Below, piece by piece: positions 2,873-28,311 of a stretch of 64,000 nt of DNA. The translations under genes and the position numbers were made by a program. Each line of letters begins with the position of its first letter. The stretch's first letter is position 1. The DNA lies in IMG/VR virus record IMGVR_UViG_3300032116_000001, positions 310,001 to 374,000 of that record. One strand, given 5' to 3'. The notes under the pieces were generated by a model that worked only from the letters and a program-made list of their open reading frames with translations, had not been told where the DNA came from and did not search any database.

Positions 2873-2946
2873 GTTGCTTCGGGCAGGAGTTAACTCCGTA
2901 AAGACTACAACCTGCGGCATCTTTAAAGGGTGAACTAAAATCAAAT

Positions 2947-3033: not shown

Positions 3034-3113
3034 AATTATCGAAGAGATTCGTATGTATATTGAAAATTAAATAGGTTTAAATGTAATATGAGGGCAAAAG
3101 CCCTCAGTGATTT

Positions 3114-3484
3114 ACGTTGTGCGCAAATGGTATGTATTCAGTTCGATTCTGAAGTTCCCTTGGTGGGTGAGTGGTTCGAGTCCACAACAACATGATTTTC
3201 TGAGCCAACAGGAATGTGTTGAAAGGCAGCAAATAGCGGCGGCGCATGGGGTTCGATTCCCTAACGCACAACGTATTGGCAATTTGAAGGGGCTAAACGC
3301 CACGGAAGCACAACTTCTTTGCTGAGCAGCCGTTGTTAAATAGCCCCCGATGATATTTTCCGATAAAATCTGATCGGTAATCAGTTCGAAGAGAACTCTA
3401 ATCGGATGCGGAGGGGAAATGTGGGTTCGAGTCCCACGCAGGCACTTGTGTCTGGTCGTTTAATGGTAGGACGCCCCGTGGGGT
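3114..3484 (+). ncRNA. candidate structured RNA with four T-loop hairpins
   Basis: 10-bp closing helix 3114-3123/3265-3274; TTCGA(T/G)T-capped hairpins at 3137, 3171, 3247, 3421. Confidence 0.55.
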
Positions 3485-3570
3485 AGAGAAGGATCACGCA
3501 CGTGATCAGAAGTAAAACGCGGCGTCGCAATTCCACGCCGATCTTCGAAACAGTATGAGGAAAGTAAAGT

Positions 3571-3645
3571 GCCGTCGTAGCTCAGTGGTAGAGCACGCCC
3601 CTGATAAGGGCGGGGTCATAGGTTCGAATCCTATCGGTGGCACCA
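3571..3645 (+). tRNA. tRNA-Ile(GAT)
   Basis: canonical cloverleaf, CGCCC-ctGATaa-GGGCG, CCA end. Confidence 0.95.
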
Positions 3646-3694
3646 TGTTTGCAAAATCTTTTGTGAATTATGATCGTATTAAAGTTGGAACATT

Positions 3695-4105
3695 ATGAAT
3701 TTAAGAACCAAATACCAAAGTAATTTTATTGTAATGCCTGAACATTGCAATTTTAGGATGCCACAAATTTTTGGCGGAGCTTTTATGGCAAAGCTTGATC
3801 TTTGTGCAGCCGCGGCTTGTAGCGAACTTCTTCAGTTTTCAGAATCGTCCTGTGACAACGCAGTAACATATAAGGTATTGGAAATAACTTTTCACAAAGC
3901 TGCTCAGATGGGAGATCAAATTTTCTTCGAAGCTGAAATTATTGAATTAAGAAACAATTCAATCACAGTTCAAGTAGAGGCGTATCGACAACCAAGAGAT
4001 CAAAAATTCCCTGAACGCATTCACACGGCATCGGCAAAATTTGTGTTTGTGACATTGCAGGGGGACAAGTATACTCCGCATGGATTAAAGCTTACTTCAT
4101 CATAA
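3695..4105 (+). CDS. hotdog-fold acyl-CoA thioesterase (YciA-like)
   Basis: VMPEHCN...IFGGAFMAKLD, ITFHKAAQMGD, AKFVFV. Confidence 0.8.
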   Translation: MNLRTKYQSNFIVMPEHCNFRMPQIFGGAFMAKLDLCAAAACSELLQFSESSCDNAVTYKVLEITFHKAAQMGDQIFFEAEIIELRNNSITVQVEAYRQPRDQKFPERIHTASAKFVFVTLQGDKYTPHGLKLTSS

Positions 4106-4159
4106 AAACGTATTTGGTAGAGCATACCCCCGAAAGAGGGCGAGGTTTGTGTAACAAAT

Positions 4160-4236
4160 GGGGCATTGGTGTAATTTGGTGAGCACAAAGGTCTGAAAAA
4201 CCTTGGGTGAGGGTTCAATTCCCTCTAGCCCCACCA
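4160..4236 (+). tRNA. tRNA-Phe(GAA)
   Basis: AAGGT-ctGAAaa-ACCTT, T arm, CCA; two mismatches at the base of the acceptor stem. Confidence 0.85.
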
Positions 4237-4244
4237 AAATTTTC

Positions 4245-4321
4245 GGCCCCATCGTCTACGATGGCTGTGACACCACCATCTCACGGTGGAAAACGGAGAT
4301 CGACACTCCGTGGGGTCACCA
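4245..4321 (+). tRNA. tRNA-Glu(CTC)
   Basis: CCACC-atCTCac-GGTGG, T-loop ATCGACA, CCA. Confidence 0.85.
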
Positions 4322-4374
4322 AATTTTCATTTGTTAGTCTGGTGCTAATCTACTGATATGGAGAACATAATTAG

Positions 4375-4752
4375 ATGAACAGATGGGAATACGCAAACTT
4401 CGAAGTGCTGAAAGGCAAGACTTTGAGAGAGGTCTTTTACTCCAAGAAAGAGGAAAAAATCTCCTTTATAGTAGACGATCAGGAAGCATATCACATGTCA
4501 CACTTTCAGGATTGCTGCGAGGCAGTTTGGGTGGAAGACATATGTGGCGACTTGAACGATTTGGTCGGAACGCCGATTCTTTTCGCAGAAAAGTCTTCTT
4601 CGGAAGACACATCTGTAGAATGGACGTTCTATAGAATCGGTACAATCAAGGGGACGGTGGTGATTCGCTGGTGTGGCGAACTCGACACTTGCTACTCTAT
4701 CGAAGTGAGCTTCTATCGTACTTTTGGCGAAGACACACCGCCCAAGACTTAG
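4375..4752 (+). CDS. conserved phage hypothetical protein
   Basis: HFQDCCEAVWVEDICGDLNDLVGTPIL motif, recognised from phage proteins. Confidence 0.75.
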   Translation: MNRWEYANFEVLKGKTLREVFYSKKEEKISFIVDDQEAYHMSHFQDCCEAVWVEDICGDLNDLVGTPILFAEKSSSEDTSVEWTFYRIGTIKGTVVIRWCGELDTCYSIEVSFYRTFGEDTPPKT

Positions 4753-4857
4753 CAGTGATTAAACACCTACTGCGATGACTGATGGATAGACATCTGACCC
4801 GAGCGGAAAGGCGCTCAAGTCGGGGGAGGCGAGAAGGTGAAGCCTCCCTTATCGAGC

Positions 4858-4934
4858 GGCCCGCTCGTCTACGTTGGCTAGGACTCCGCGTTTTCAGCGC
4901 GGCAAACAGAGATCGACACTCTGGCGGGTCACCA
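4858..4934 (+). tRNA. tRNA-Glu(TTC)
   Basis: CCGCG-ttTTCag-CGCGG, T-loop ATCGACA, CCA. Confidence 0.9.
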
Positions 4935-5006
4935 TTTTTAATCAGATTTCATAAAATCGCTAATTTTTTGTGATTCTGATCGTATTATAGATAACAGAAC
5001 ATTTTC

Positions 5007-5082
5007 GGGGCCATAGCTCAGTTGGGAGAGCACCTGCTTTGCAAGCAGGGGGTCGAGAGTTCGAGTCTCTCTGGCTCCACCA
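5007..5082 (+). tRNA. tRNA-Ala(TGC)
   Basis: canonical cloverleaf with G3:U70, CCA. Confidence 0.95.
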
Positions 5083-5190
5083 CGAACGGTTCTAAGGTAG
5101 GACATTAAATATTGATGCGGGGCGAACGGACAATAAAAAGTCAATGTGCCAACCAAACCATGGAAGTCTGATGGCATCAATGAAAAAAAT

Positions 5191-5267
5191 CGGGGATTAG
5201 CTCAGTTTGGTGGAGCGGGCGCTTTGGGAGCGTCAGGTCGCAGGTTCGAGTCCTGTATCCCCGACCA
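5191..5267 (+). tRNA. tRNA-Pro(TGG)
   Basis: GGCGC-ttTGGga-GCGTC, CCA. Confidence 0.95.
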
Positions 5268-5316
5268 TTTTTCAAAAAATCTTTGTTCATATTATATTTA
5301 TTGTACAAAAAACAAT

Positions 5317-6078
5317 ATGAACAAAAAGACATCTATAATATGGACTGAATCCAAAGAAAATTTTCAACTTCGAGTTAATAATTGCACGAGCATTGCGGGC
5401 ATAATACGCAGCTTTGGCCTTTCTATAAGTGGTGCTCAACATAGCCGAATCAAACAGCGCATTGCTCAGGATTGTATAGATATTTCTCATATTCCTTTGG
5501 GTATCGGAGCAAGTAAAGGCTGCAAGAGATTAAATAAGCGAATTCCTTTGGAAGAATATTTATCAAATAATCGGCCCATTCAATCACACGATTTAAAAAA
5601 ACGATTGTTAAGAGAAAATATTTTTGTTTATGAGTGTAGTGAATGCAAATTAGGATCATTATGGAATGGCAAGCCGATTTCATTACAGCTTGATCATATT
5701 AATGGCAATAATTGTGATAACAGATTGGTTAATCTTCGAATTTTGTGTCCAAATTGTCACTCTCAAACTCCAACATTTAGCGGAAAACACAAAGCGAAGA
5801 AGTGTTTGGATTGTGGTGGTAAAATTAGCAGGCCTACATCTACAAGATGTAAAAAATGCCATATACACAACAATCGATCACAGCCACCAAAGCCTTCTAA
5901 GTACATAAAATTTGGATTAGAAAAAGAAGAACTTGAGATGATAATATGGAAAAAGCCAACTTGTCAAATTGCAAAAGAATTTGGTGTTTCAGACAAAGCT
6001 GTTGAAAAAAGATGTAAAAAGCTAGGAGTTTCTAAGCCTCCAAGAGGTTATTGGAGAAAGCTGGAAACCGCAAAATAA
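5317..6078 (+). CDS. free-standing HNH homing endonuclease
   Basis: CSEC...LQLDHINGNNCDNRLVNLRILCPNCHSQT; start moved to the ATG downstream of tRNA-Pro. Confidence 0.85.
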   Translation: MNKKTSIIWTESKENFQLRVNNCTSIAGIIRSFGLSISGAQHSRIKQRIAQDCIDISHIPLGIGASKGCKRLNKRIPLEEYLSNNRPIQSHDLKKRLLRENIFVYECSECKLGSLWNGKPISLQLDHINGNNCDNRLVNLRILCPNCHSQTPTFSGKHKAKKCLDCGGKISRPTSTRCKKCHIHNNRSQPPKPSKYIKFGLEKEELEMIIWKKPTCQIAKEFGVSDKAVEKRCKKLGVSKPPRGYWRKLETAK

Positions 6079-6084
6079 AAATGT

Positions 6085-6159
6085 GGGCGTGTGACGCAAT
6101 GGTAGCGTGGGTGCATTACAGGCATCAAGTTGCAGGTTCGAATCCTGTCATGCCCACCA
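6085..6159 (+). tRNA. tRNA-Val(TAC)
   Basis: GGTGC-atTACag-GCATC, CCA. Confidence 0.9.
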
Positions 6160-6251
6160 CCGATTAGTATAATTTTAAATAACCGAAAAGGTTTAGAACA
6201 GTAGCATCCAGGTAATTTCAGTTCAGGGCTCTGCTGCTGTTCTAAAAACGC

Positions 6252-6326
6252 GGGCGGTTAGCTCAGTGGTAGAGCACTACATTGACATTGTAGGGGTCAC
6301 AGGTTCGAAACCTGTACCGCCCACCA
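6252..6326 (+). tRNA. tRNA-Val(GAC)
   Basis: canonical cloverleaf, ttGACat loop, CCA. Confidence 0.95.
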
Positions 6327-6343
6327 AAATATTTTGTTTAAAT

Positions 6344-6421
6344 CTGGGCGTAGTTCAGTTTGGTTAGAATGCTACTCTGGGAGAGTAGAGGTCATTGGTT
6401 CAAATCCAATCGCTCAGACCA
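6344..6421 (+). tRNA. tRNA-Pro(GGG)
   Basis: CTACT-ctGGGag-AGTAG, CCA. Confidence 0.95.
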
Positions 6422-6486
6422 TTTTTACACATTGAAACAAAATTCAAACGGTATGCGTATAATAAATATACAAACAATTTGATTGC

Positions 6487-6565
6487 TTGACGGAAGTTTT
6501 GCGGATGAAACGCTGGGCCGATGCATACCCCCAGAGATCGCAGGTTCGAATCCTGCCTGTCTTGC
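6487..6565 (+). ncRNA. tRNA-like RNA with 12-nt anticodon loop
   Basis: D stem GTTT/AAAC, CTGGG-CCGATGCATACC-CCCAG, T arm GCAGG-TTCGAAT-CCTGC, partial acceptor stem, no CCA. Confidence 0.5.
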
Positions 6566-6569
6566 AATC

Positions 6570-6626
6570 GGGACCGAAGGTCAGACTTCTGCATCAGTCA
6601 TTGGTTCAACTCCGATAGGTCCCACA
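6570..6626 (+). ncRNA. D-armless mini tRNA-like RNA
   Basis: GGGACC/GGTCCC acceptor, GACT-TCTGCATC-AGTC arm, ATTGG-TTCAACT-CCGAT T arm. Confidence 0.5.
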
Positions 6627-6710
6627 AGTTTCTCGTACATTGCGGTCTGAGATGACCGCCCCGATCATAAAATAAAACAATCAATGGAAAGCGACTATCA
6701 CTATACCATT

Positions 6711-6802
6711 GGGTGATGACTCCCCTGCATGTCTGTAAAACATGTGCCGCATCAGAACGTGGGGAAATATGGCGAGAGGTGAAATTCCTCCATCACCCAC
6801 CA
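6711..6802 (+). ncRNA. non-canonical tRNA-Tyr(GTA)-like RNA (8/4 stem, no D arm)
   Basis: GGGTGATG/CATCACCC, CATGT-ctGTAaa-ACATG, GAGG-TGAAATT-CCTC, ACCA end. Confidence 0.65.
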
Positions 6803-6847
6803 CGACATTCAATGCGAAGGCATTAACGACCATAACAGATAAAGCAA

Positions 6848-6932
6848 GGGAGTATCGCATAGAGGCAATTGCGGGAGACTGTAAATCTCCTCTGGAAACA
6901 GTTCGTAGGTTCGAGTCCTGCTGCTCCCACCA
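6848..6932 (+). tRNA. tRNA-Tyr(GTA)
   Basis: GGAGA-ctGTAaa-TCTCC, long variable arm, CCA. Confidence 0.95.
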
Positions 6933-14729: not shown

Positions 14730-14804
14730 GGCGTCCGTAGCTCAATGGCAGAGCACCTGACTGTGGCTCAGGAAGCGCGGGTTCGATCCCCGTCGGACGC
14801 CCCA
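14730..14804 (+). tRNA. tRNA-His(GTG)
   Basis: G-1, CCTGA-ctGTGgc-TCAGG, C73, CCA. Confidence 0.95.
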
Positions 14805-18079: not shown

Positions 18080-19186
18080 TTAAACAGGAGTTAATTCATC
18101 CCATAATTTCCAATAAGGTCCAAATGGGATATATGGCTTAAAATCAAACATAAACTGGCGAAGTTCTCTCCAAAGCATCCAGAATTCATTGGCTTTTTCC
18201 GCAGACCATTTATTTTCGTAATCTAAGATATCATTAAGGGCCTGATTATATTCCTTGTTGAGTGGGTGCTTTGTGTCAAAAATATATTTATTTCCGTGTG
18301 CTTCGGCCTTCGCCTGCCACATTTGATTGAAATCATTACTTCTTGTCATTTGCATGATTGCTGATTCGCGTAAATCTTCCATCGCTGCATCTATTTCTGA
18401 TATTTTTTGTGCAAATGGCTCCACAGATGAACTTCCGCCAAGATAATCATCTCGTATCACTTTGAAAGTAGGTATGATTCTTTGCAAAAAGTAGCGTTGC
18501 ATTTCTTCAGCGGCAAATGCAATACCCTGAGAATGATCCAGCTGGTGACCGTGAAATTCTCTGAAATTTTCTCTCTTCTCATGAGGATTGATAACGGGGT
18601 CTTCTTGGGGAGGCGGTGGGTCCCAGGTTTTGACTTTGATTGCATGAATTCCATAAGGAGTCAGGTCTAATTCTTCCCCATTGGCAAAGGCTTTGCCCAT
18701 CGCCTCTAAGGCCTGATCTAATCTAACGTCTCTGTTAAGTTCATTCAAATCGTAATCATCTTGCTCCGAAGAAGATGCTTTCCGTTTACCAAAATTATTG
18801 TTTAAAACACTTAGGTCAACAATTTCCATAGTTGAGCCATCGGGGTCAGTTGTAATAATACCATCATAGCCATCTGCGATCAGAGCATTTGAAAGCTCTA
18901 AGCCAGTTTTATTATATCGGTCACGAAGTACTTGCTTCCAATTGTCTTTATCACTATACCCGCCTTGGCCCCAAGGAATGATTAAGGGATTGGTAAATTC
19001 AATTTCTCCGTGCTCCCAGCCCTCAACAGGAGAAGTGCCTTCCTCGATCTTTGTTACATATTTCCCATGTGGCTCAATATCTTGGCCATATGTATCTTTA
19101 AAATCAGGTGCGCTAATAGGATTCCGCTGGTACCTAATTTTGTAAGTATCTTTCTTTTGCTCTGACTGTGCCTTTTTATACCACAT
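18080..19186 (-). CDS. MWY-tagged protein, ART-like domain
   Basis: N-term MWYKKAQ; NPLII...GYDGII pattern seen in polyvalent-protein ADP-ribosyltransferase-like domains. Confidence 0.55.
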   Translation of the reverse strand: MWYKKAQSEQKKDTYKIRYQRNPISAPDFKDTYGQDIEPHGKYVTKIEEGTSPVEGWEHGEIEFTNPLIIPWGQGGYSDKDNWKQVLRDRYNKTGLELSNALIADGYDGIITTDPDGSTMEIVDLSVLNNNFGKRKASSSEQDDYDLNELNRDVRLDQALEAMGKAFANGEELDLTPYGIHAIKVKTWDPPPPQEDPVINPHEKRENFREFHGHQLDHSQGIAFAAEEMQRYFLQRIIPTFKVIRDDYLGGSSSVEPFAQKISEIDAAMEDLRESAIMQMTRSNDFNQMWQAKAEAHGNKYIFDTKHPLNKEYNQALNDILDYENKWSAEKANEFWMLWRELRQFMFDFKPYIPFGPYWKLWDELTPV

Positions 19187-19189
19187 GTG

Positions 19190-21757
19190 TTATCCTCCTT
19201 CGTATTTGTAATATGGATTTGCAGGTCTCCGACGAACACTGACTTCTTCAGAAGAATCTGGCCCTATGCTTTCTCTAAGCACCTTGCCAGTTTCTATGTC
19301 ATCAATAGAAACTGGCCCAATGTATTTTCGGGGATTGTGAGACTCAATGTAAAACTGCATTCTCTCAGCATCATCACCATAGGCATCATACAATCCTCTT
19401 GCTATTTCTTGAAGTGATGCTTTGTTCAGGTTATATGTTTCGACATGCTTGCCCTGCACCCGATGCCAACCAAAATTTTTAAGGGCGTATGTTCTGGGAT
19501 CGCGAAAACCATCCCAGTCTTTATCCATTTGTTCACGCGCTTCTTTGGGGTCTAATTTAGGGTTTTGTTTGAGTTTTTTCCAAAGCAAGTATTCATACAG
19601 GTCTGCATCTTCATGGGCGTTTTCAATCGCATCTCCATTTCCATTGTGAATACTTGTTAAATGCTGATTATAATCATCTAAGTCCCTAATATTATTTCTG
19701 AAAATATCATACGCATGCTCCCTTGTTATTGGCCACTCAGAATGATTTTCTATGTCAAAGCCAAGTCTATTGAGCATTTCCTCTTCGGCCAACATTTCAT
19801 GATTAATATCGCCAACATCACCGTCTGCATAAACAGCCTCGCCGTCTTTTAGCCACCATTCGTTAGCTGTGCGTTGCATTGACGTCACTCTTGTCATCAA
19901 CTGATCTGCCATGCGATACATACCCTTCTTATCACATGCGCTTGATAAAATCAACATTGATTGAATCTGATTGTAAAGGCTCCTCGGGATTTTATTTGCT
20001 TGGCGCAATTGTTTTCTTTTCGAATATTTCCATGTGCCATCGAATTTTTGATCAAACTTTGGATCATTCATATCCTGATCGCTTAAATCGTCAACGTGCG
20101 TAAATAATTTGGGGTAATCAGCAGAATTGATTTTCTTTATTTCAAGCAGTATTGGCAGTTGTTGGTATCCAGTTAATTCTTCAAACAAAGACATATATTC
20201 GTCATCTATAGACTCGCCCAACTGTGATTGGATTTCCATATCCAAGCCGTATGGAAGTGTACTGGTGATATATTGTTGATGTTCGGGGTTTGAATAAAGC
20301 TCAGCGGTGTTAATTCGATATTCTTTTTTATATTCATCAATACTTTTAATCGAATTATCATAAAGTGTTTTTACATTTGAAGTGTTCATCCACCAATATA
20401 TCCCACGTTCTTTATTGCTCTTGCTTTCCCAATCAGCAAAGTTTAATGCAAAGGGTTTGTGAATTTCATCTGGGTTTGCTATCATAGCAGACATATTTGC
20501 AATGTCAGATTTCATAGCAACTTCGATCATGGTTTTTGCAACGACATCCATGTTATTTGTGTACTTTATGTTTGTTGGCACTTGCTTTCGGGTTGTGGGG
20601 TCCCATTGCACATCAGTCAAGGCCTCGGAAACATTTTCGTATATTGTCTCAATGTCATTGTGTCTTATGTCTTTTTCAACTTGTTTATAAGGGATTCCAT
20701 AATCATCATCTACAACATCCTCGTCGTAATGAGCCCCGTAAGCGCTATCATATATTCCTGCCACAATAGATTCAATTTCCTTGCTACTACCCCAATCAAT
20801 TTCTTCTTCAAAGGGGCTTTGGCTCGACCATTCTGCGTCACCTAGATCACCGAACCACTCAGAAATTCGCTCCCGATCTTTTGAATCAGGGGTTTTATTA
20901 CCAAATCCCTTAATCTGTAGGATTGTATTGGTTTTTCCGTCCATTTCTATTGTTACGTGCGGCTTGTTGTCTGGGCTTCTGAGTGAAAATATTCTAATAT
21001 CTCCTCTTTCTACTTGATAACAATAAGAACCAACGCAGTGAGACATTTGATTGCCCTCTACAGCTAGGTCATTCTTATTTGTCACCATGGTCATAAACCA
21101 TCCGTCTTCCCATTGATACACTACACGCTCGTCAATAATTTCTCCATTTTCGTCTCTTTTTAATGGCGTGTAAATTTTACCTTCACCTTTACCAGCTATC
21201 ATCTGATGCCAATCGTTTGATTTCTCAAGTGCTTGAGAGAGGTTATAGCTCGTGATGTCTAGCCGTGGTGTTTCAATTTTTTGATTACGATACCAGTCGT
21301 ATATTTCCCCAAAAAGATTGTTGAAATTTTCATACACACCTTGACTATTCAAATTAGTAAACAATCTGTAAACGTATCCGCCATTTTCATCGGGCTCTAA
21401 TCTTAACTTTCTTAATTGAGTTAAGGCCCATTTTTGAAACAAATCATCGTATCTAGCCACGAGTTGTAATTCCATCGGAGTCCACGATGTTGCTTTGGAC
21501 TGGGGTACAAAAACAGATTGTTCAAGTGTATTCCAATCGAGGCTTGGGTCTTGGTTCAATCTGTTGACATAAATGGGCAGCTTGTCTTGTGGTAAATGCT
21601 TTAAATTTTCAATCACATCTGCTTTTGTTCCGCGAGCTTGCAAGTTGTCAATTAATTCTTGCAGACCAGCCACAATAACACGACCAAGCCTCATAGGCTT
21701 TGCGTCAGATGTTTTGTTTGCGCCAAGGACGCGAGAAAATTTAAAACTATGCTTCAT
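19190..21757 (-). CDS. PcfJ-like domain multi-module protein
   Basis: DLAVEGNQMSHCVGSYC...IFSLRSPDNKPHVTIEM...ILQIKG. Confidence 0.75.
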   Translation of the reverse strand: MKHSFKFSRVLGANKTSDAKPMRLGRVIVAGLQELIDNLQARGTKADVIENLKHLPQDKLPIYVNRLNQDPSLDWNTLEQSVFVPQSKATSWTPMELQLVARYDDLFQKWALTQLRKLRLEPDENGGYVYRLFTNLNSQGVYENFNNLFGEIYDWYRNQKIETPRLDITSYNLSQALEKSNDWHQMIAGKGEGKIYTPLKRDENGEIIDERVVYQWEDGWFMTMVTNKNDLAVEGNQMSHCVGSYCYQVERGDIRIFSLRSPDNKPHVTIEMDGKTNTILQIKGFGNKTPDSKDRERISEWFGDLGDAEWSSQSPFEEEIDWGSSKEIESIVAGIYDSAYGAHYDEDVVDDDYGIPYKQVEKDIRHNDIETIYENVSEALTDVQWDPTTRKQVPTNIKYTNNMDVVAKTMIEVAMKSDIANMSAMIANPDEIHKPFALNFADWESKSNKERGIYWWMNTSNVKTLYDNSIKSIDEYKKEYRINTAELYSNPEHQQYITSTLPYGLDMEIQSQLGESIDDEYMSLFEELTGYQQLPILLEIKKINSADYPKLFTHVDDLSDQDMNDPKFDQKFDGTWKYSKRKQLRQANKIPRSLYNQIQSMLILSSACDKKGMYRMADQLMTRVTSMQRTANEWWLKDGEAVYADGDVGDINHEMLAEEEMLNRLGFDIENHSEWPITREHAYDIFRNNIRDLDDYNQHLTSIHNGNGDAIENAHEDADLYEYLLWKKLKQNPKLDPKEAREQMDKDWDGFRDPRTYALKNFGWHRVQGKHVETYNLNKASLQEIARGLYDAYGDDAERMQFYIESHNPRKYIGPVSIDDIETGKVLRESIGPDSSEEVSVRRRPANPYYKYEGG

Positions 21758-22731
21758 GAGATATTCGATTTGCCCCCAGCTTTATCTGTGTATGTTGTGG
21801 TTTTTGGCTTCTTTCCATCGCCAGGCTCACGTTCCTTTCGCGATTTTTGCTTCATGCGCTCTTTGCGCTCCTTGTCAGACAGGCTTTTGGCTTTATTAGC
21901 GGGTGTGCAAACGGGCTTTTTGCCTTTGCTACTATCACTTCTGCCGCATTCTTCGTAGCCACCATCTTTTTTTGGTCGCCGTACATCCACCCACTTTTCG
22001 TTCTTAAACCAATCGTCTAAACCACCGTGGTTTTTGGCATATTTGTTGGTTATTAAATCTATAGCATCCGCAAGGTGGTGTTTGCCATAGCAATCGGCTG
22101 CCTGCGCAGTTTTTGCTAATTCATCTGACACGAAAGTGACATCATCGTTGTCGTCGTCATCGCCGTACCATTCCGTGCGTCGTTTTGCAGCCTTGTCAAA
22201 AGCGCCAAGACAATCACTTAAATATTCAGCTAATATAAAATCAGGCGTATCACTGTTGTTTTCTAGAGAAAATGAATTAATTAGGCTTTCAAGTTCTTTT
22301 CGGAAGGATTTATGATCGTTAGCTTCTTTAATGTCGTCGTCTGATTCCTGATCCCACTCTGATTGTGGTACTAAATTGATAATTTGAAATCCGACATCTG
22401 GCAATTCAAATGCAATGTGATTAGCGTCAATAGCTGCAGGAGCGTTCATTGCTTCATCAGGCATAGAATCAATAAATTCACCGATAGTGATCCATTCTTT
22501 TGAATCCCAATTTCCTTTCGGGTCTACGCGATAAAGATTTGAGTCATAATTGTTTAAAGCGTCTTCCAAGGTCATTTCGGACTCTATGACATCTTTGTGT
22601 TCCAAAAGTGATTTATTTTCTTTGGCAACACGAATAAACACATCATGAAGAGATGATGCTTCATGATGTAAACCAAGCCCTTCAATCAAAGACGCAGTTT
22701 GATGAATTTTTGCAAGCAAATTTTGATTCAT
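21754..22731 (-). CDS. modular phage hypothetical protein
   Basis: C-terminal WFKNEKWVDVRRPKKDGGYEECGRS...KPVCTP module recognised from phages; two copies of the helical tag. Confidence 0.7.
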   Translation of the reverse strand: MNQNLLAKIHQTASLIEGLGLHHEASSLHDVFIRVAKENKSLLEHKDVIESEMTLEDALNNYDSNLYRVDPKGNWDSKEWITIGEFIDSMPDEAMNAPAAIDANHIAFELPDVGFQIINLVPQSEWDQESDDDIKEANDHKSFRKELESLINSFSLENNSDTPDFILAEYLSDCLGAFDKAAKRRTEWYGDDDDNDDVTFVSDELAKTAQAADCYGKHHLADAIDLITNKYAKNHGGLDDWFKNEKWVDVRRPKKDGGYEECGRSDSSKGKKPVCTPANKAKSLSDKERKERMKQKSRKEREPGDGKKPKTTTYTDKAGGKSNIS

Positions 22732-22732
22732 T

Positions 22733-23299
22733 TTATTTACCCGTCATGTCCCCGACTGTTTTGCCTGCTTCCCACATTCGGCAAGACCAATATCTTGCCT
22801 TTGTCTTTGGGCCAGGATTATCACAATTATGTCGGGCGCGGAAGTTCTTTCGGCGCTCAGGATTGTCTCTTTTAATATCAGTCGTTGGATCGCCGAAATT
22901 AACTTTTTTAACCTTATCACCATCTTTGACATAGACAGAGAATTTTTTAGGCCCATCTGGGGTGCGAAAAGGCTTGTTTAGTGGTTTGTTGGACTTTGCC
23001 TGAGCTTCTCTTTGTGGAGATTTTTCCAATTTGATAATTTTATCAAAATAACCAATGTCAATAAGCCGAGGGTCATCAATGTATTTTTCCACCGCATCAT
23101 TAAACTCGGCTCTTGCTTCATAGTGTAGTGTTTCCACGTTTTCTTCAAAATCAAGCTCTTCTAACTCTTTTGAAGATGACCTTTGATTAGTTGTGTTGAC
23201 ATTTGCTATCCGACTCAAAACATCAGTAAGGATATCAGCTTCTTCGTGCAGGCCTAGTTTGTCCAATTCGTGTGCCACTTGAGCAATCTTTTTCAGCAT
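22733..23299 (-). CDS. modular phage hypothetical protein
   Basis: LNKPFRTPDGPKKFSVYVKD...FRARHNCD...ARYWSC module known from T4-like phages; start at MLKKIAQ. Confidence 0.75.
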   Translation of the reverse strand: MLKKIAQVAHELDKLGLHEEADILTDVLSRIANVNTTNQRSSSKELEELDFEENVETLHYEARAEFNDAVEKYIDDPRLIDIGYFDKIIKLEKSPQREAQAKSNKPLNKPFRTPDGPKKFSVYVKDGDKVKKVNFGDPTTDIKRDNPERRKNFRARHNCDNPGPKTKARYWSCRMWEAGKTVGDMTGK

Positions 23300-23300
23300 A

Positions 23301-23867
23301 TTAGTCCTCTTTTTTCCACTTACCGCCCTTAGCCTTGTATCGCTTACTTGCAGCCCCGAGTGCATAAGCTGATGGCCAGACGTCGTATTTGTCCTTGGCC
23401 CAATTTTTGCAGCTTTCCCAAAGCTCAGGATTAGTGGGGATATTTTCTTTTTCTTTAGTCTTGGCAACTCGAATAAAAACTTCATGCATTTGTGATGCTT
23501 CAGCTGTCATACCCCGATCCTCAAGCTCTTCAGTGATTTGAGAAATCTTTGTAAGGACGCTGGCCACAGCACTAGTTGTAATGTTTTCTTCATCTTCTTC
23601 GTCGTCGCTCTGCAGGTTGTCTTCAAGTTCAAAATAACGTCTTAAAATTAACAATTCTTTTCTTAACTGATCTATTTCTTCGGGATCGTAGATTCCGCGA
23701 TCAAGCCCCTGTAAACACTGATCGACTTCCATCATTCCTTCCCAGGGATAATGTGCCACACCTGTTGACGCAAAAGAGTACAATGCAGAACCTTGACCGC
23801 CATGCCAATCACTTGCAATGCGGCGAAGTTCCCCGATGCTATATCCACTAATATCAATTTCACCCAT
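23301..23867 (-). CDS. modular phage hypothetical protein
   Basis: WHGGQGSALYSFASTG module, helical tag, PTNPELW...VWPSAYA...YKAKGGKW module. Confidence 0.7.
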   Translation of the reverse strand: MGEIDISGYSIGELRRIASDWHGGQGSALYSFASTGVAHYPWEGMMEVDQCLQGLDRGIYDPEEIDQLRKELLILRRYFELEDNLQSDDEEDEENITTSAVASVLTKISQITEELEDRGMTAEASQMHEVFIRVAKTKEKENIPTNPELWESCKNWAKDKYDVWPSAYALGAASKRYKAKGGKWKKED

Positions 23868-24075
23868 GATAATTCTTTTTTACACTCTTTGAATCTCTTT
23901 CCCTGTTTTGTCGATGCTCATTGTAGGTTCAATTTCATTTAAAAAAAACTTTTTTTGAAAAAAGACAAAAAAGCTGCAACATTTTCTTTGGCCAATCGTT
24001 ATAAGTAGTGTAAGACGAATTGAAAAGAGCCAAAACGATCTGAAAAGCAAATTGAAAATTTTATAGAGGTTTGAG

Positions 24076-25032
24076 AAAAGCTGCGACGGCACGGAAAGAC
24101 GTGCGAGAGCAGATGGTAGAAATGAGCTAGGTTTGCATCTCCCCGATAGAGGAAACTCATTTCATCTGGTAACCAATCCAGATCGTAGCTTTTCTCGGCG
24201 GCATGGCGTCGATAGATATCGCACTGCAAAGTGCAGAAAGAGATCAGGCCACTTCACGGTCTCTCGCCTTTCTTAAGAAAGGTCAACCATGCAAGCCCAG
24301 CACCTGTGAGCTTCAGGCCCAAAACCTGGAGATATGGTGGAAGATGGAGGGAGAAGAGTCAGCGTTATCGAGGCAACCGTGTAGATAACAGTTTGATCGC
24401 CGTTGCAAGCGGCAATGCCCACGCAAGCCATCGACATCTAAGGAGCGAAGGGTAGTTATATTTGTCCGAGGTTTAAGCAGCCAAGGGCTATATAGCACGA
24501 TGAAAGGCGAGGCGGAGAAGATGGACTTCAATGCCGTATTAGTCTTGAAATCGCGTTGAGTAACCTAGCAGGGTGAAAGACATGAGGCGTGTCATATTTT
24601 GTATTGTAAAGCAATATGAAGTGGCTGGACGCGCACGTCTCGCGTGAAGTTGCAAACATAGCTGAATGGTACAGCACTGTTATCTGAACAGTAGATTATT
24701 GGTTCAAGTCCAATTGTTTATTAAAAATGCAAAAGTCGCGTCCTGTGTTAATTGAAAGCAGCGTATTTCCTGAGTGTGGGACAGTCAGGAGCATCGAAGA
24801 TGGCAAGTCTAAGATGTATCGTAGGATTCAAGACGTAGTATCTTAGCGGATATTCACGGCAGTAAAATGTCGGCGGCAAGAAGATCACGTAGAAGATTAA
24901 CATTAAACTGGAAAAGCCACCAGTATAAAAAGGCCGCTGTGTGAAGGTACTGCTGGCAACAGTAGTGGACAATTAGGCAAAGCACATCGCAAGTGTGCTG
25001 TACTCCTAAAAAGCCGTCACAAATCAGTTTTT
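24076..25032 (+). ncRNA. large ornate ncRNA, GOLLD-like
   Basis: ~960 nt without a credible ORF; 5'/3' helices AAAAGCTG/CAGTTTTT and GACGGC/GCCGTC; many GNRA-capped stems; promoter motif at 23975-24000. Confidence 0.7.
24652..24722 (+). ncRNA. tRNA-like domain embedded in the large ncRNA
   Basis: GCT-GAATGGTAC-AGC, ACTGT-TATCTGA-ACAGT, ATTGG-TTCAAGT-CCAAT; no U33, no CCA. Confidence 0.7.
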
Positions 25033-25310
25033 AGTCTACAAATTGAAACTCCCACATTAAATTTTAATGACTAACATTTTGTTAGTTGAATCCTAAATGA
25101 GTCCCAATCCAACAGGGGTTCTTGGTCAGATTTAAGTTCTGCTGGGAGACTCATACGATGTAATCCTCGGAACCGATGCTCTGGGACATTGAATGAAAGT
25201 TCAATAGTCATATGATCGCCGAGGCGAGAAGAAAAGAAGTTTTGGCTTTCTTCTTTAAAAAAGCCAATTAGATTTGCGCTCGAATCAACCAAGGACGCTT
25301 GGGAATATCG

Positions 25311-26432
25311 TCAACTACCACACGCACAAGGCGTGTGGCTTGCTACAAGCTCAGCCTTCGGCTGAGCGAACAATAGGGAGGTTGACTGCTCCCCTAAAGA
25401 ACCTATATTCTTACTGGCATTAAAGTCTGCATTCTCCGTGTGTCCGCAGGACATGCAGAGAAACACAGTTTGACTTTTTCTATTGGCTTTTTCACAATAT
25501 CCGCACTCACTACACGTCGCAGACGTGTAGTGAGCAGGAACAATAGCTAAAGGAACTCCATAGAGTTCAGCTTTGTAAGTAATGTAGCTTCTGAGTTGGG
25601 CGAATGCCCAACTCATTCTTTGACTTCTATTCACTCGCCTGACCGTTACTCTTTTGTTGATATGCGTTAGCTCTTCGAGAGCCAACGCATATCCGAGTGC
25701 CTTTGCTTTTGTTACTAAAAGTTTTGAAATGACGTGATTTGTGTCTTTTCTAAATCTGGATTCTTTTTGTCCACATTTCTTGATTCTTCTTTTTGCAGAG
25801 CGTGTTCCACGCTTCTGCAATCTTTGTCGATGAGAGTGATATTGTTTTCTTTTCTTCTCGATGTGTTCTCCCGAGAACACATCTCCTAAAGAACTTACAG
25901 CGATTTGTTTCACTCCTAAGTCTATTCCTATAACGTCTTTGGCGTTATAGGCTGATTCTGTTGGAATTTCTAAAGTACAAAGAAGATAGAACTTGCCATT
26001 TTGATAAACTAAATCAACTTGCCCCTTTCTATATTTGAAGCGTTCTTTGTCGTATATTTGGATTGGGATATTGATTCTTCCATCATTAGTCCAGATATTA
26101 ACTAAATCAGTTCCTTTAAAAGTGATTACTCTGTCGTCGTAGACGACAGCAGAAGTCTTTTTGAAGTAATTTGGATTTTTGCTTCTTTTCTTTTTATATG
26201 TAGCGGTAACCACATCAATAGCCCTTATTATTAATTGAGAAGAGAAGCTTGGATGCGTTTCACGCATCCCATGATATGCATTTCTTTGCAATTGAACTTT
26301 ATTATAAGTTTCTGTTGAATGAGCTATTGTTGAAAGCTCATTACAAACATCATTGAAAGTATTCATAGTGCGCAGAAGCGCACTATGATGAATCTCATTT
26401 GTATTGAGTTTCACTTTCAGAGTGATATTCAC
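25311..26432 (-). CDS. tnpB: IS200/IS605-family TnpB with Zn finger
   Basis: GIDLGVKQIA, LALEEL, YTSATCSECG...CMSCGHTENADFNASKNI; 3' hairpin CTCAGCC-GAA-GGCTGAG and GTAGTTGAC end. Confidence 0.92.
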   Translation of the reverse strand: MNITLKVKLNTNEIHHSALLRTMNTFNDVCNELSTIAHSTETYNKVQLQRNAYHGMRETHPSFSSQLIIRAIDVVTATYKKKRSKNPNYFKKTSAVVYDDRVITFKGTDLVNIWTNDGRINIPIQIYDKERFKYRKGQVDLVYQNGKFYLLCTLEIPTESAYNAKDVIGIDLGVKQIAVSSLGDVFSGEHIEKKRKQYHSHRQRLQKRGTRSAKRRIKKCGQKESRFRKDTNHVISKLLVTKAKALGYALALEELTHINKRVTVRRVNRSQRMSWAFAQLRSYITYKAELYGVPLAIVPAHYTSATCSECGYCEKANRKSQTVFLCMSCGHTENADFNASKNIGSLGEQSTSLLFAQPKAELVASHTPCACGS

Positions 26433-26586
26433 ATTATGTGTTTATGTGTAATGCGTTCTAACACCTTCGTGATTTTCAATTATTTTTACATATTATCGTA
26501 AATTCGATTCCTCCTATAAAATTGTCGTCTTGGCGCAGACGTTAAACGCGCCTTTTCTGTTTTAAAAATTGTACAAGGAAAGTGTA

Positions 26587-27372
26587 ATGAGATTAAAAAC
26601 GAAACAAGAAATTTCAAAGATGTTTATCACTGGGGCCATTTTAGCCGATGCCCTTAAAATCATGAAAGAGTCAGTGGTGCCAGGTATCACAACCTTGGAA
26701 ATTGATTCTATAGGAGAATCGTATGTTAAGAGTTGTGGTGCAGTGGCCGCATTAAAGGGATTTAAGCCCCGATTTTCCGATCATGTTTACCAGCATGCAA
26801 CTTGTATTTCAGTTAATAATCAAATTATTCACGCCCCGCCCTCCGACTATACGATAAAAAAGGGGGATATTGTAACCTTGGACATGGCTATATCTAAAGC
26901 TTATTGGTATGCCGATGCGGCTATCACTATCGTAGTAGAAGACAATGACAGTGATGAATACAAAGAGTCAAAAATACTATCTGAATATACACACTTGGCA
27001 CTTTTGTCAACGATTGAAAAAATTATGTCAGGAGACATAAAAAAAACAAGCGACATTGGAAAGCATATTCAGAAAATGGCCGATAAAAAAAACTTCGGCG
27101 TGGTATCTGCGGCTTGCGGTCACTCGATAGGTCAAGAATTACATGAGCTAGGAATACAGATTCTTAATTCTTATGAAGAAGGAGATTCGGGGGTAAATAT
27201 TGTGCCAGGAATGACATTCTGTATAGAACCTATTTTTACAATGGGATCGGGTGATATTACGAAAGACAAGCTTGATCCTTGGACGATATATACTTCTGAT
27301 GGCTCTCATTCGGCTCACTGGGAACACACCGTGGCAATTACAGAAAATGGCCCCTTAATATTGACATTATGA
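26587..27372 (+). CDS. map: type I methionine aminopeptidase
   Basis: CISVN...IHAPP, LD...YADAAIT, GHSIG...HE, IEP, SAHWEHT. Confidence 0.92.
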   Translation: MRLKTKQEISKMFITGAILADALKIMKESVVPGITTLEIDSIGESYVKSCGAVAALKGFKPRFSDHVYQHATCISVNNQIIHAPPSDYTIKKGDIVTLDMAISKAYWYADAAITIVVEDNDSDEYKESKILSEYTHLALLSTIEKIMSGDIKKTSDIGKHIQKMADKKNFGVVSAACGHSIGQELHELGIQILNSYEEGDSGVNIVPGMTFCIEPIFTMGSGDITKDKLDPWTIYTSDGSHSAHWEHTVAITENGPLILTL

Positions 27373-27507
27373 AACCAAAGATTAGACAATCCGTAATTTG
27401 CGCTCATGTATGCTTCGATTTTGCGATAGATAGCGGGAAAGCCCACGGCTTCAAATTTCTCCTTAAAAAATCCCCCATTTTTGAGATTCCATTAGCATAT
27501 AAAAGTT

Positions 27508-28311
27508 ATGCTAAAACAAAAACAAACTTATAGCAGCAAGTCTGTCGTCCACGTTGAATCCGAACTAGAGATTGTGCCTTTGGGACATCTTGATTTGCAT
27601 GCATACCGACTGGTTCAAAATTCAATCATTGATTCACAGGGCGATTATATTATTAGAGTTGACATACCCAAGTCTTCAACTACCGAAGGCATTGCTCATC
27701 TGTCGGATATTGAAAAATTTATCAACTCAGGAGAAGGTTATTCGACTAAATCAAATATTGATGGAAGAATTGATTCAAGTTATTGGGCCTTTTTGCCTAT
27801 GTCTGAAAGAAAAAGTGTGTTTAACTATGATAACTTTAGGCAGGCTGTGGTTGATAATCCATTTACTGCTTTTACGGGTGGCAAAGTAAGTAAAGATGAT
27901 CTAGTAACGTATAGTGGTGGGTATTTTTTTGATATTAACCTGAAACCGTTGCCACAACCAATTGTTTTGGATGCAAGCGGTATGTATACTGAACGTTTTT
28001 ACGACTTAGAAAAACTTATCAACATCCTTGGAAAAAGAAAAGATATTAAGTTTTATGATATAATGGGCAGAGAAATTGCGCATGCCGATGAAGATGCTAT
28101 CTTTTACTCTGACGGAGAAGATACTATTTTTGCGCACTGGCACCCATCGGCCAGTGACATGGAGTTGATTTGGGAAGAGTGTTGCCTGATCTTGCCGCCT
28201 AAGGAAGGCAAGAAACAAATTGACACCACTCCGTATTTCAGAATGCATGAAGCGATTTTGAATCGTGATTTGCTAGGCCTTCGGCGCAAAGGCGCTCGTT
28301 GGAGCCTGTAA
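27508..28311 (+). CDS. hypothetical protein
   Basis: 267-aa ORF. Confidence 0.65.
   Translation: MLKQKQTYSSKSVVHVESELEIVPLGHLDLHAYRLVQNSIIDSQGDYIIRVDIPKSSTTEGIAHLSDIEKFINSGEGYSTKSNIDGRIDSSYWAFLPMSERKSVFNYDNFRQAVVDNPFTAFTGGKVSKDDLVTYSGGYFFDINLKPLPQPIVLDASGMYTERFYDLEKLINILGKRKDIKFYDIMGREIAHADEDAIFYSDGEDTIFAHWHPSASDMELIWEECCLILPPKEGKKQIDTTPYFRMHEAILNRDLLGLRRKGARWSL

What the first reader, a model, noticed from the sequence alone, without database searches (positions are those of the whole stretch)
24076..25032. ~960-nt end-paired ornate RNA (GOLLD-like)
Seen: its own promoter motif, 5'/3' long-range helices, and GNRA-capped stems (GCACT-GCAA-AGTGC, GCCGTT-GCAA-GCGGC, CTG-GCAA-CAG, GCACG-GAAA) with no credible ORF. 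Known: GOLLD and ROOL are giant phage-associated ncRNAs of unknown function, often linked to tRNAs. The GOLLD assignment is from recalled resemblance only; it could be a long variant or a new class.
Basis: partly seen in the sequence, partly recalled or inferred. Interest (0 to 1): 0.75.

Follow-up and report, generated by a model that had tools for sequence, protein, structure and literature searches.

The report
Divergent GOLLD RNA in jumbo phage
This is a real, abundantly expressed 979-nucleotide non-coding RNA of a 379-kb freshwater jumbo phage; it is an unusually divergent member of the known GOLLD family of cage-forming phage RNAs, and it carries a degenerate tRNA-like module in its internal linker.

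Summary
The RNA is real. Four independent lake metatranscriptomes each contain one 967-998-nt contig, 100% identical to the window, covering 24077/24087 to 25052/25055. The flanking genes have zero coverage. Ten RNA runs from at least 8 studies hold 98-100% of its sampled words.

It belongs to the GOLLD family. Rfam RF02032 matches 24582-25043 over the whole model (127.9 bits, E 5.5e-35), below the curated 150-bit cutoff; 37 ordinary GOLLDs score 192-283. A model I built from 12 other GOLLDs finds only this site in the window. Our sequence keeps 26 of 27 consensus pairs there, 17 through changes on both sides.

The layout is the published GOLLD layout: a 505-nt 5' region, the P14 hairpin, a linker with a tRNA-like element (24652-24722), then P15-P27.

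The 5' half has no detectable relative except a 99%-identical strain, so its fold could not be tested by covariation. The embedded "tRNA-Arg(UCU)" is the only one of 34 phage tRNAs with A33. It also has a mispaired acceptor top and no CCA.

Its "end-paired" helices are not, because both 3' arms belong to family-conserved helices. The promoter claim is unverified.

Verdict: a new, outlying member of a known kind.

The parts
24077..25055 (+). Full-length GOLLD-family transcript (979 nt)
   Evidence: One contig per run in 4 independent metatranscriptomes: 24083-25052, 24077-25055, 24081-25054 (runs into an Illumina adapter) and 24087-25053. There are 0 mismatches, word depth is 11-80, and flanks 22100-24039 and 25400-27900 have depth 0. 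Ten RNA runs hold 0.98-1.00 of its words. Strand is inferred from the covariance-model and tRNA hits.
23868..24076 (+). Upstream A/T-rich spacer that must hold the promoter (not identified)
   Evidence: It lies between the start of the minus-strand gene 23301-23867 and the RNA 5' end. RNA depth here is zero. No sigma-70-like site was found on the + strand and no recurrent motif. AAAAGCTGCRAC occurs at both 23969 and 24076.
24077..24581 (+). 5' region (505 nt), lineage-specific; presumed counterpart of the GOLLD 5' 'cap' domain
   Evidence: Not covered by RF02032. GC is 0.50 and the MFE z-score is -3.18. No homolog was found by nhmmer, a profile or a CM in 69 viral, 6 metagenome and other loci. 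The only relative is the 99% strain L103, with 5 differences here.
24077..24192 (+). 5'-terminal subdomain closed by a local 9-bp helix (24077-85 / 24184-92), containing the hairpin 24089-24104
   Evidence: The helix has ensemble probability 0.87 and the hairpin 0.99 in the full transcript. This is thermodynamic prediction only, with no covariation.
24582..24643 (+). P14 hairpin (Rfam model positions 1-62), first element of the conserved 3' region
   Evidence: cmscan alignment with PP mostly *. It aligns with the same hairpin in L018, L022, L108 and L109.
24644..24724 (+). Variable linker (J after P14) carrying the tRNA-like element
   Evidence: Falls in the unstructured variable stretch of the Rfam model. 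In env-38 the equivalent linker is disordered and faces the cage lumen (PMC12286853).
24652..24722 (+). Embedded tRNA-like element, nominally tRNA-Arg(UCU), degenerate
   Evidence: Found by ARAGORN and by Rfam tRNA at 45.1 bits. It is the only one of 34 phage tRNAs with A33. GC is 0.35 against 0.46-0.66. The acceptor top is G1.U72 plus C2xA71, no CCA is encoded, and the D-loop GG and T-loop are kept. A canonical tRNA-Arg(UCU) with CCA exists at genome 31084-31159. RNA contigs run straight through the element.
24725..24758 (+). Universal GOLLD core: AAAUGCAAAAGUC, 16 nt, GAAAG, starting 2 nt after the tRNA-like element
   Evidence: Motif located. The same junction, with the tRNA 3' end within 3 nt of the motif, occurs in L018, L022 and L108; in L109 the gap is 36 nt.
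24744..24904 (+). Long-range helix 24744-53 / 24895-24904 enclosing P16-P22
   Evidence: 9 of 10 pairs are canonical, with several both-side changes against the Rfam consensus. The enclosed stretch around 24836-24894 (model positions about 215-285) aligns poorly (PP 3-5, most non-canonical flags), so this sub-region is the most divergent part of the 3' domain.
24940..25021 (+). Closing helix UGUGAAGGU (24940-48) / GCCGUCACA (25013-21), enclosing the P25 hairpin (24949-55/24960-66, GCAA loop) and P26 (24973-77/25005-09)
   Evidence: In CM alignment A3 all these pairs but one in P26 (C24978xU25004) are canonical in ours, and the family shows both-side changes at 23 of 25 pairs. P is 0.5-0.87. 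The L103 change G25013A keeps the pair with U24948.
24982..24998 (+). Extra hairpin GCACA-UCGCAAG-UGUGC inserted in loop L26
   Evidence: Shown as an insertion relative to both the Rfam model and my model R2. It is absent from the 12 other GOLLDs aligned.
25025..25045 (+). P27 hairpin CAGUUU / AAAUUG with 9-nt loop UUAGUCUAC
   Evidence: 6 of 6 pairs are canonical in ours and the helix covaries across the family. The loop differs from the family-invariant UA.UCUCA.

Best explanation
The locus encodes a 979-nt stand-alone non-coding RNA (24077-25055, + strand) that is a highly divergent member of the GOLLD family. Shown here: it is made as a discrete, abundant RNA in natural lake communities while neighbouring phage genes are silent. 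Its 3' 474 nt are homologous to the GOLLD 3' region (P14-P27) and keep that region's helices through compensatory changes. Its order of parts is the published GOLLD order: 5' region, P14, variable linker, conserved core. Its linker holds a tRNA-shaped element that stays in the full-length RNA. Inferred from solved GOLLD structures (env-38 14-mer; S. agalactiae 12-mer): the 3' regions of several copies join through loop-loop and A-minor contacts into a ring. The 5' regions cap each half-shell and set the copy number. Two half-shells close into an RNA-only cage with the linker, and so 10-14 tRNA-like modules, facing the lumen. Because this element has A33, a mispaired acceptor top and no CCA, and the phage has a normal tRNA-Arg(UCU) elsewhere, I infer it is a permanently tethered tRNA mimic or stored, processing-resistant tRNA. 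I do not think it is a tRNA gene meant for release. The likely biological role is in the phage's takeover or protection of the tRNA and translation apparatus during infection. That last step is speculation, as it is for the whole family.
For: Transcript. Homology: RF02032 covers model 1-416 at 127.9 bits, E 5.5e-35, and is the only hit in the 379-kb genome, with 0 hits in 14 control genomes. Independent model R2, built without this sequence, gives one hit in the window at 24902-25060 (23.2 bits, E about 0.003) and none in three chance-motif loci. Ours keeps 26 of 27 consensus pairs, 17 changed on both sides. Family covariation: 96.7% of cells paired against 60.5% in shuffles, 0 of 500 shuffles as high. 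Architecture and the linker tRNA junction are shared with L018, L022 and L108. tRNA outlier status. Phage context with 34 tRNAs and a 12-tRNA array 17-21 kb upstream. No ORF or Pfam hit. Family properties (conserved 3' region, variable 5' region, lumen-facing linker, tRNAs in the linker, cages of 12-14 copies, rise during lysis): PMC12286853 and PMC12990946.
Against: The Rfam score is below the curated cutoff (127.9 against 150) and far below 37 ordinary GOLLDs (192-283). R2 scores it at only 23 bits. The family-invariant L27 loop sequence is altered. The P19-P21 sub-region, which in env-38 carries inter-subunit kissing loops, aligns poorly. The 5' half has no detectable homolog, so its fold, and any cap function, rest on thermodynamic prediction alone. 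Oligomerisation was not and could not be tested here. Assembled contigs show that the unprocessed form exists but cannot exclude that a fraction is cleaved at the tRNA. Contigs carry no strand information.
Confidence: 0.8

Rival explanations
1. It is chiefly a tRNA precursor. A long primary transcript has the job of delivering tRNA-Arg(UCU) after RNase P/Z processing, and the GOLLD-like flanks act as a processing or timing scaffold ('inhibited storage' followed by release).
For: A cloverleaf with an intact D/T elbow and a UCU anticodon is present. The review literature proposes storage of embedded tRNAs (PMC12990946). L108 carries a fully canonical tRNA-Glu with CCA at the same position.
Against: A33 is unique among the 34 phage tRNAs. 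The 1-72 and 2-71 positions are mispaired, no CCA is encoded and GC is 0.35. The phage already encodes a canonical tRNA-Arg(UCU). In four runs the dominant assembled RNA is continuous across the tRNA, with no break at 24652 or 24722.
Confidence: 0.1
2. It is a new class of large ncRNA that shares only a few short motifs with GOLLD by convergence or by acquiring a module, and it works differently (no cage).
For: The score is below Rfam's cutoff. The 5' half is unique. P19-P21 is divergent, the L27 loop is altered and L26 carries an extra hairpin.
Against: The match is full-length and co-linear at E 5.5e-35. An independent model hits the same place, with 26 of 27 pairs kept by compensatory change. 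The P14, linker and core junction are the same as in other GOLLDs. 5' regions fail to align even between bona fide GOLLD subgroups, as the literature says.
Confidence: 0.05
3. It is not an independent RNA gene but a by-product of neighbouring elements: a UTR or antisense RNA of the flanking genes, or guide/omega RNA of the adjacent TnpB.
For: A TnpB gene lies 255 nt downstream on the opposite strand. A weak CRISPR-DR2-like match overlaps 25027-25049 on the minus strand.
Against: RNA coverage stops at 25055 and starts at 24077, with zero coverage over both neighbouring genes. The related strain L103 has the identical RNA but lacks this TnpB unit. The structure hits are on the + strand while the neighbours are on the - strand.
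Confidence: 0.02
4. It encodes one or more small proteins, possibly under an alternative genetic code, since the phage has two tRNA(CUA) suppressors.
For: Several 61-76-aa ORFs overlap the region. The genome carries amber-suppressor tRNAs.
Against: The longest frame is 84 aa under the standard code and 116 aa with TAG as sense. There are no Pfam hits. Covariation-supported RNA helices span the 3' half.
Confidence: 0.02

Closest known systems
GOLLD RNA (Rfam RF02032; Weinberg et al. 2009; cryo-EM of env-38 in PMC12286853 and of S. agalactiae GOLLD reviewed in PMC12990946)
   Same: The RNA is large (979 nt) and phage-encoded in a tRNA-rich genome. The order of parts is the same: 5' region, P14, variable linker, conserved core GCAAAAGUC...GAAAG, P15-P27. 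The conserved helices are kept by compensatory changes. It is expressed as a discrete abundant RNA.
   Different: It scores 127.9 bits, below the 150-bit cutoff and below all 37 GOLLDs I scored (192-283). The host genome is a 379-kb freshwater jumbo phage rather than a 35-45-kb (pro)phage. The 505-nt 5' region has no detectable similarity to any other. L26 carries an extra hairpin, the L27 loop sequence is altered and P19-P21 is divergent. Cage formation is untested.
GOLLDs with a tRNA in the linker (Mycolicibacterium GOLLD with tRNA-Phe in J13/15, PMC12990946; loci L018, L022, L108 and L109 found here)
   Same: A tRNA-shaped element lies after P14, and in L018, L022 and L108 its 3' end abuts the A-rich GCAAAAGUC core as in ours (36 nt away in L109). 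In L018, L022 and L109, as in ours, the 1-72 pair is mismatched and no CCA is encoded.
   Different: The anticodon identity differs (Arg UCU here; Pro, Gln, Asn, Glu and Phe elsewhere). Ours also has A33 and a second mismatch at 2-71. The 5' regions are not alignable with ours. Those RNAs that I scored reach 192-226 bits on Rfam.
ROOL RNA (Rfam; cage-forming phage lncRNA)
   Same: It is a phage-encoded, tRNA-associated, ~600-nt ornate RNA that forms RNA-only cages with a lumen-facing linker, so the likely mode of action is the same.
   Different: No ROOL match appears even at E<=10 over 23800-25400. ROOL's 5' and 3' halves are intertwined, whereas this RNA has the two-domain GOLLD layout.

Membership tests
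GOLLD (RF02032) | Statistically significant, full-length, co-linear match of the conserved 3' region (P14-P27) to the family covariance model | tested here: met
   24582-25043, model positions 1-416 of 416, 127.9 bits, E 5.5e-35. It is the only hit in the 379-kb genome, with 0 hits in 14 control genomes.
GOLLD (RF02032) | Score at or above Rfam's curated gathering threshold (150 bits). This is an operational annotation cutoff, not a biological feature. | tested here: not met
   127.9 against 150. 37 other GOLLDs score 191.7-282.7. The shortfall comes from the 71-nt tRNA insert, the L26 insert and a poorly aligned P19-P21 stretch. Rfam-based annotation would therefore miss this RNA.
GOLLD (RF02032) | Consensus helices of the 3' region kept through compensatory base changes | tested here: met
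   Model R2 was built without this sequence. In its alignment ours forms 26 of 27 consensus pairs, 17 with both sides changed. The helices covary across the family (96.7% paired against 60.5% shuffled). The long-range helix is 9 of 10 canonical. Caveat: the alignment is fitted to the model's structure.
GOLLD (RF02032) | Universally conserved sequence blocks (AAAGCAAAAGUC, GAAAG, GUGGA, AAAG, L27 UA.UCUCA) | tested here: inconclusive
   GCAAAAGUC, GAAAG, GUGGA and AAAG are present. The L27 loop reads UAGUCUAC instead of the UA.UCUCA that is invariant in the 12 aligned GOLLDs, and AUAAGG reads UUAGG.
GOLLD (RF02032) | A several-hundred-nt, poorly conserved 5' region preceding P14, in the same transcript | tested here: met
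   505 nt (24077-24581) are transcribed contiguously with the 3' region. They are unalignable to other GOLLDs, as 5' regions also are between bona fide GOLLD subgroups. The fold of this region is untested.
GOLLD (RF02032) | Variable linker after P14, sometimes carrying a tRNA | tested here: met
   The linker is 24644-24724, with a tRNA-like element at 24652-24722. The same junction is seen in L018, L022 and L108. Literature: PMC12286853, PMC12990946.
GOLLD (RF02032) | Encoded in a phage or prophage, typically near tRNA genes | tested here: met
   The source is a virus record of 378,848 bp, CheckV 100%. It has 34 tRNAs plus a tmRNA. A 12-tRNA array lies at window 2947-6932 and tRNA-His at 14731.
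GOLLD (RF02032) | Accumulates as a discrete abundant RNA (during lytic growth in L. brevis) | tested here: met
   A discrete 967-998-nt contig at depth 11-80, with silent flanks, appears in 4 metatranscriptomes, and 10 RNA runs hold the RNA. Timing relative to infection cannot be told from these data.
GOLLD (RF02032) | Self-assembly into a closed dihedral RNA-only cage (12-14 copies) | not testable with these tools
   The complex predictor takes RNA chains of at most 300 nt. This needs cryo-EM or mass photometry of the in vitro transcript.
ROOL / OLE / other Rfam large ncRNAs | Any match to the family covariance model | tested here: not met
   No hit appears at E<=10 on either strand of 23800-25400 other than GOLLD, tRNA and four insignificant matches.
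Functional elongator tRNA (for the embedded element) | U33, a paired acceptor stem and a 3' CCA, encoded as in most of this phage's tRNAs | tested here: not met
   The element has A33 (33 of 33 other phage tRNAs have U33), G1.U72 plus C2xA71, and no CCA (30 of 34 encode it). CCA could be added by the host enzyme, so this is suggestive, not proof of non-function.

The most novel reading that the evidence does not exclude
The unalignable 505-nt 5' region is a structurally new cap domain that gives this GOLLD a cage geometry or copy number different from the known 12- and 14-mers. The linker element is not a tRNA gene at all but a permanently tethered tRNA mimic (A33, unprocessable acceptor end). 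It would be displayed 10-14 times inside the cage, for example as a decoy or trap for a host tRNA-directed factor such as an anticodon nuclease or a modification enzyme. Degenerate acceptor ends in three of four other linker-embedded elements hint that this may be a general feature of tRNA-bearing GOLLDs.
Probability: 0.2. Interest if true: 0.75.

Novelty: new member of a known kind. Interest (0 to 1): 0.45.

Why it matters
GOLLD RNAs are among the largest structured bacterial and phage RNAs. They form RNA-only nanocages, and their function is still unknown. This example extends the family in three ways.

First, it extends the family to a 379-kb freshwater jumbo phage. I found no such report in the searched library.

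Second, it shows that standard Rfam annotation misses real family members.

Third, it supplies field evidence: a defined 979-nt species with ends mapped to a few nucleotides, dominating transcription of its neighbourhood in many lake metatranscriptomes.

It is also a natural experiment for two open questions. One is how the variable 5' domain sets cage stoichiometry. The other is what linker tRNAs are for. Here the 'tRNA' looks unfit for decoding and is retained in the mature RNA, which favours a mimic or storage role over simple tRNA supply.

Tried and rejected
1. Covariation for the 5' half. I looked for relatives by several routes:
- blastn against 50,697 phage records: no match.
- nhmmer against 69 viral GOLLD loci: no match to the 5' half.
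- A T-variant core-motif scan of IMG/VR: only 2 loci I already had.
- A three-block pattern in metagenome contigs: 6 loci, none sharing the 5' half.
- The same pattern in GTDB genomes: 1 chance hit in a Bacteroidia MAG, in a coding region with no Rfam match.
- An nhmmer profile from the canonical cluster: core only.
- CM R1 of 24077-24196 against 32 loci: nothing, best E 0.77 on the wrong strand.
- Synteny through neighbouring proteins: this gave only L103, at 99% identity with 6 differences in the RNA. More distant PcfJ-protein contigs are densely coding, with no GOLLD core.

2. Promoter. There is no sigma-70 site upstream, no recurring upstream sequence, and no enrichment of the Bacteroidota -7 box. 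Only TATA-like 7-mers and AAATCCC are enriched upstream of ORFs.

3. GNRA enrichment as evidence. It is not significant.

4. Host or phage typing through the terminase. There are no Terminase_6N or 6C hits, and I dropped this line.

5. A quick script first reported badly mispaired acceptor stems in other embedded tRNAs. ARAGORN drawings corrected this to a 1-72 mismatch, plus 2-71 in L018.

6. A first pass of helix coordinates was off by 1-2 nt and was redone by string search.

7. TnpB omega-RNA as an explanation of the region. I rejected it because L103 keeps the RNA without the TnpB unit.

Full report
**Observation**

The region 24076-25032 lies between two minus-strand genes: a 188-aa ORF at 23301-23867 and a TnpB at 25311-26432. 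It is richer in G+C than its flanks, 0.48-0.51 against 0.36-0.42. Its longest open frame is 84 aa, or 116 aa if TAG is read as sense, which I checked because the phage carries two tRNA(CUA) genes. None of six small ORFs hits Pfam.

**Transcript evidence**

The window is part of a 378,848-bp virus record rated 100% complete. Public freshwater metatranscriptomes hold the sequence. I laid four of them, from four studies, on 22100-27900. Each gave a single contig of 967-998 nt with no mismatch:
- 24083-25052
- 24077-25055
- 24081-25054, which continues directly into an Illumina adapter
- 24087-25053

Word depths were 11-80. The roughly 1.9 kb upstream (22100-24039) and the stretch 25400-27900 downstream had depth zero in all four runs. 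That pattern rules out DNA carry-over and shows a discrete RNA of about 979 nt. A second search with the RNA alone found ten RNA runs from at least eight studies (2015-2018) holding 98-100% of its sampled words, and four 2025 runs holding about 70%. The 3' end lies about 20 nt beyond it.

**Identity**

At Rfam gathering thresholds the window shows only tRNAs. With E-value reporting on the region alone, the GOLLD model RF02032 matches 24582-25043 over all 416 model positions at 127.9 bits, E 5.5e-35. That is under the curated 150-bit cutoff. It is the only such hit in the whole phage genome, and 14 control genomes give none. For scale, 37 GOLLDs from 35-72-kb phages and proviruses, retrieved through the core motif, score 191.7-282.7 bits.

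So as not to rely on Rfam alone, I built a covariance model (R2) of the P24-P27 part from 12 diverse GOLLDs, excluding this one:
- It scores those GOLLDs at 104-138 bits.
- It gives no hit in three loci that matched the core motif only by chance.
- It gives exactly one hit in the 64-kb window, at 24902-25060 (23.2 bits, E about 0.003).

In the resulting alignment our sequence forms 26 of 27 consensus pairs, 17 of them with both nucleotides changed relative to the commonest pair. Across the family these helices covary strongly: 96.7% of cells are paired against 60.5% in shuffles, 23 of 25 pairs show both-side changes, and pairing falls to 32-44% when partners are slid. The alignment is fitted to the model's structure, which favours pairing, but the margin is large. 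The long-range helix 24744-53/24895-24904 is 9 of 10 canonical.

Homology with GOLLD is therefore secure, and so is strong sequence divergence.

**Architecture**

According to the literature, GOLLD has a universally conserved 3' region (P14-P27) and a poorly conserved 5' region. A disordered linker after P14 points into the cage lumen and sometimes contains a tRNA. In env-38 the 5' region is residues 1-420 and the 3' region 421-833 (PMC12286853; PMC12990946).

Our RNA has the same order of parts:
- 5' region, 24077-24581 (505 nt)
- P14, 24582-24643
- linker, 24644-24724, with a tRNA-like element at 24652-24722
- core AAAUGCAAAAGUC-16 nt-GAAAG, from 24725
- P15-P27, up to 25045
- about 10 further nt to the 3' end

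Departures from the family are:
- an extra hairpin (24982-24998) inside L26
- an altered L27 loop, UAGUCUAC where all 12 aligned GOLLDs have UA.UCUCA
- a poorly aligned stretch at model positions about 215-285, the region that carries inter-subunit kissing loops in env-38

**The 5' half**

I could not find any relative of the 5' half other than strain L103. L103 is a 10.2-kb ENA contig, 99.07% identical over 19000-25310, with six differences inside the RNA and the same 126-bit GOLLD hit. All other routes failed: phage database blastn, nhmmer on 69+6 loci, a family profile, a CM of the first 120 nt, pattern scans of viral, metagenome and genome collections, and synteny through neighbouring proteins.

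This is in character for the family. Even bona fide GOLLD subgroups in my sample do not align with each other in the 5' region. It does mean the 5' fold rests only on thermodynamics: z = -3.2, against -1.9 to -2.4 for coding controls.

**End pairing**

In the real transcript they have ensemble probability 0.000 and 0.002 and cost 6.3 kcal/mol to enforce. A local helix, 24077-85/24184-92, has probability 0.87.

More decisively, the 3' arms are already used in family-conserved helices:
- GCCGUCACA (25013-21) pairs with UGUGAAGGU (24940-48) in the family's covarying closing helix.
- CAGUUU (25025-30) is the 5' strand of P27.

The one natural substitution there, G25013A in L103, preserves the family pair with U24948 (G.U to A-U). 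I therefore reject the end-paired architecture.

**The embedded tRNA**

ARAGORN and Rfam call it tRNA-Arg(UCU). Among the phage's 34 tRNAs it stands out in four ways:
- It is the only one with A33. All 33 others have U33.
- It has the lowest G+C, 0.35 against 0.46-0.66.
- It has G1.U72 and C2xA71 at the top of the acceptor stem.
- It encodes no CCA, while 30 of 34 do.

The phage also has a canonical tRNA-Arg(UCU) with CCA at genome 31084-31159. The D-loop GG and the T-loop are intact, so the tRNA elbow shape is probably kept. The RNA contigs run through the element without a break.

Four of 59 other GOLLD linkers in my loci also carry a tRNA-like element. In L018, L022 and L108 its 3' end lies within 3 nt of the core motif; in L109 it lies 36 nt away. 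In L018, L022 and L109 the 1-72 pair is mismatched and CCA is absent. Only L108's is canonical.

I infer a retained tRNA-shaped module rather than a tRNA gene meant for release. Contigs cannot exclude partial processing.

**Mechanism**

Shown:
- a discrete abundant RNA
- GOLLD 3'-region homology with its helices preserved
- the GOLLD domain order
- a retained tRNA-like linker element

Inferred from solved relatives:
- self-assembly into a dihedral RNA-only cage
- the 3' regions forming the ring and the 5' regions the caps
- the linker modules facing the lumen

Speculative:
- a role in tRNA or translation takeover, or as a decoy

In L. brevis the GOLLD RNA accumulates during lysis but is dispensable (cited in PMC7567579).

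**Novelty**

The family, its variable 5' region and its linker tRNAs are all known, so this is a new member of a known kind, though an outlier that Rfam thresholds miss. In the searched library no paper reports a GOLLD in a jumbo or huge phage; the two co-mentions of GOLLD and 'jumbo' found do not concern one. The promoter claim remains unverified.

Noticed in passing
window 25311-26515 (minus strand); L103:1-824: The TnpB unit (OrfB_IS605 plus Cas12f1-like TNB, ORF 25311-26432) is an indel polymorphism. The 99%-identical strain L103 matches up to 25310, exactly the base before the tnpB stop codon, and resumes at 26516. About 800 nt of unrelated, apparently non-coding sequence lies between. 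The unit is single-copy in the genome, and a second distant TnpB-like frame lies at genome 144749-145393.
   Followed up: partly
window 25095-25282: One metatranscriptome (X10) has a separate 188-nt contig here at low depth (3.1). It lies between the GOLLD 3' end and the tnpB stop and overlaps a 73-aa minus-strand ORF with no Pfam hit and a terminator-like hairpin (25267-25242, minus strand). Its strand and nature are unknown.
   Followed up: no
genome 294065-294858 (outside the window): The phage encodes a tmRNA (tag AENNFAFAA) and two tRNAs with anticodon CUA (amber suppressors). Reading TAG as sense raises the number of frames of at least 150 aa from 301 to 355. This is a weak hint of TAG recoding in part of the genome and was not tested.
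   Followed up: partly
window 23969-23980 and 24076-24087: The 12-mer AAAAGCTGCRAC occurs twice 107 nt apart, and the second copy is exactly the RNA's 5' end. There is no RNA coverage at the first copy. This may be chance or a duplicated start-site element.
   Followed up: no
L018, L022, L109 (tRNA-like elements just upstream of the GOLLD core motif): Linker-embedded tRNA-like elements in other GOLLDs (Pro AGG, Gln CUG, Asn GUU) also have a mismatched 1-72 pair and no CCA. This suggests that processing-resistant tRNA mimics may be a recurring feature of tRNA-bearing GOLLDs. Only L108's tRNA-Glu is canonical.
   Followed up: partly
L108 (Ga0326513_10000389) 656-3962; L109 394-560 and 1366-1508: L108 has a GOLLD core sitting inside an array of 25 tRNA genes within 3.3 kb. 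L109 carries two GOLLD 3' regions about 960 nt apart on one 1.56-kb contig.
   Followed up: no
window 2947-6932, 14731-14804, 62471-62545: A 12-tRNA array, a lone tRNA-His and a minus-strand tRNA-Met lie in the window. tRNA-Ser(CGA) at 3113-3195 has acceptor mismatches and no CCA, and it was not reported by Rfam at gathering threshold.
   Followed up: no
whole genome, 150 nt upstream of ORFs: TATA-like 7-mers (ATATATA, TATATAA) and AAATCCC/AAAATCC are enriched 3-4-fold upstream of ORFs of at least 120 aa. These are possible phage promoter or translation-initiation signals. The Bacteroidota -7 box is not enriched.
   Followed up: no
sequencing runs X2-X8: Besides freshwater metagenomes, seven DNA runs labelled 'fungus metagenome' (2019) hold the locus at 96-100% of its words, which is an unexpected sample label for this phage.
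   Followed up: no
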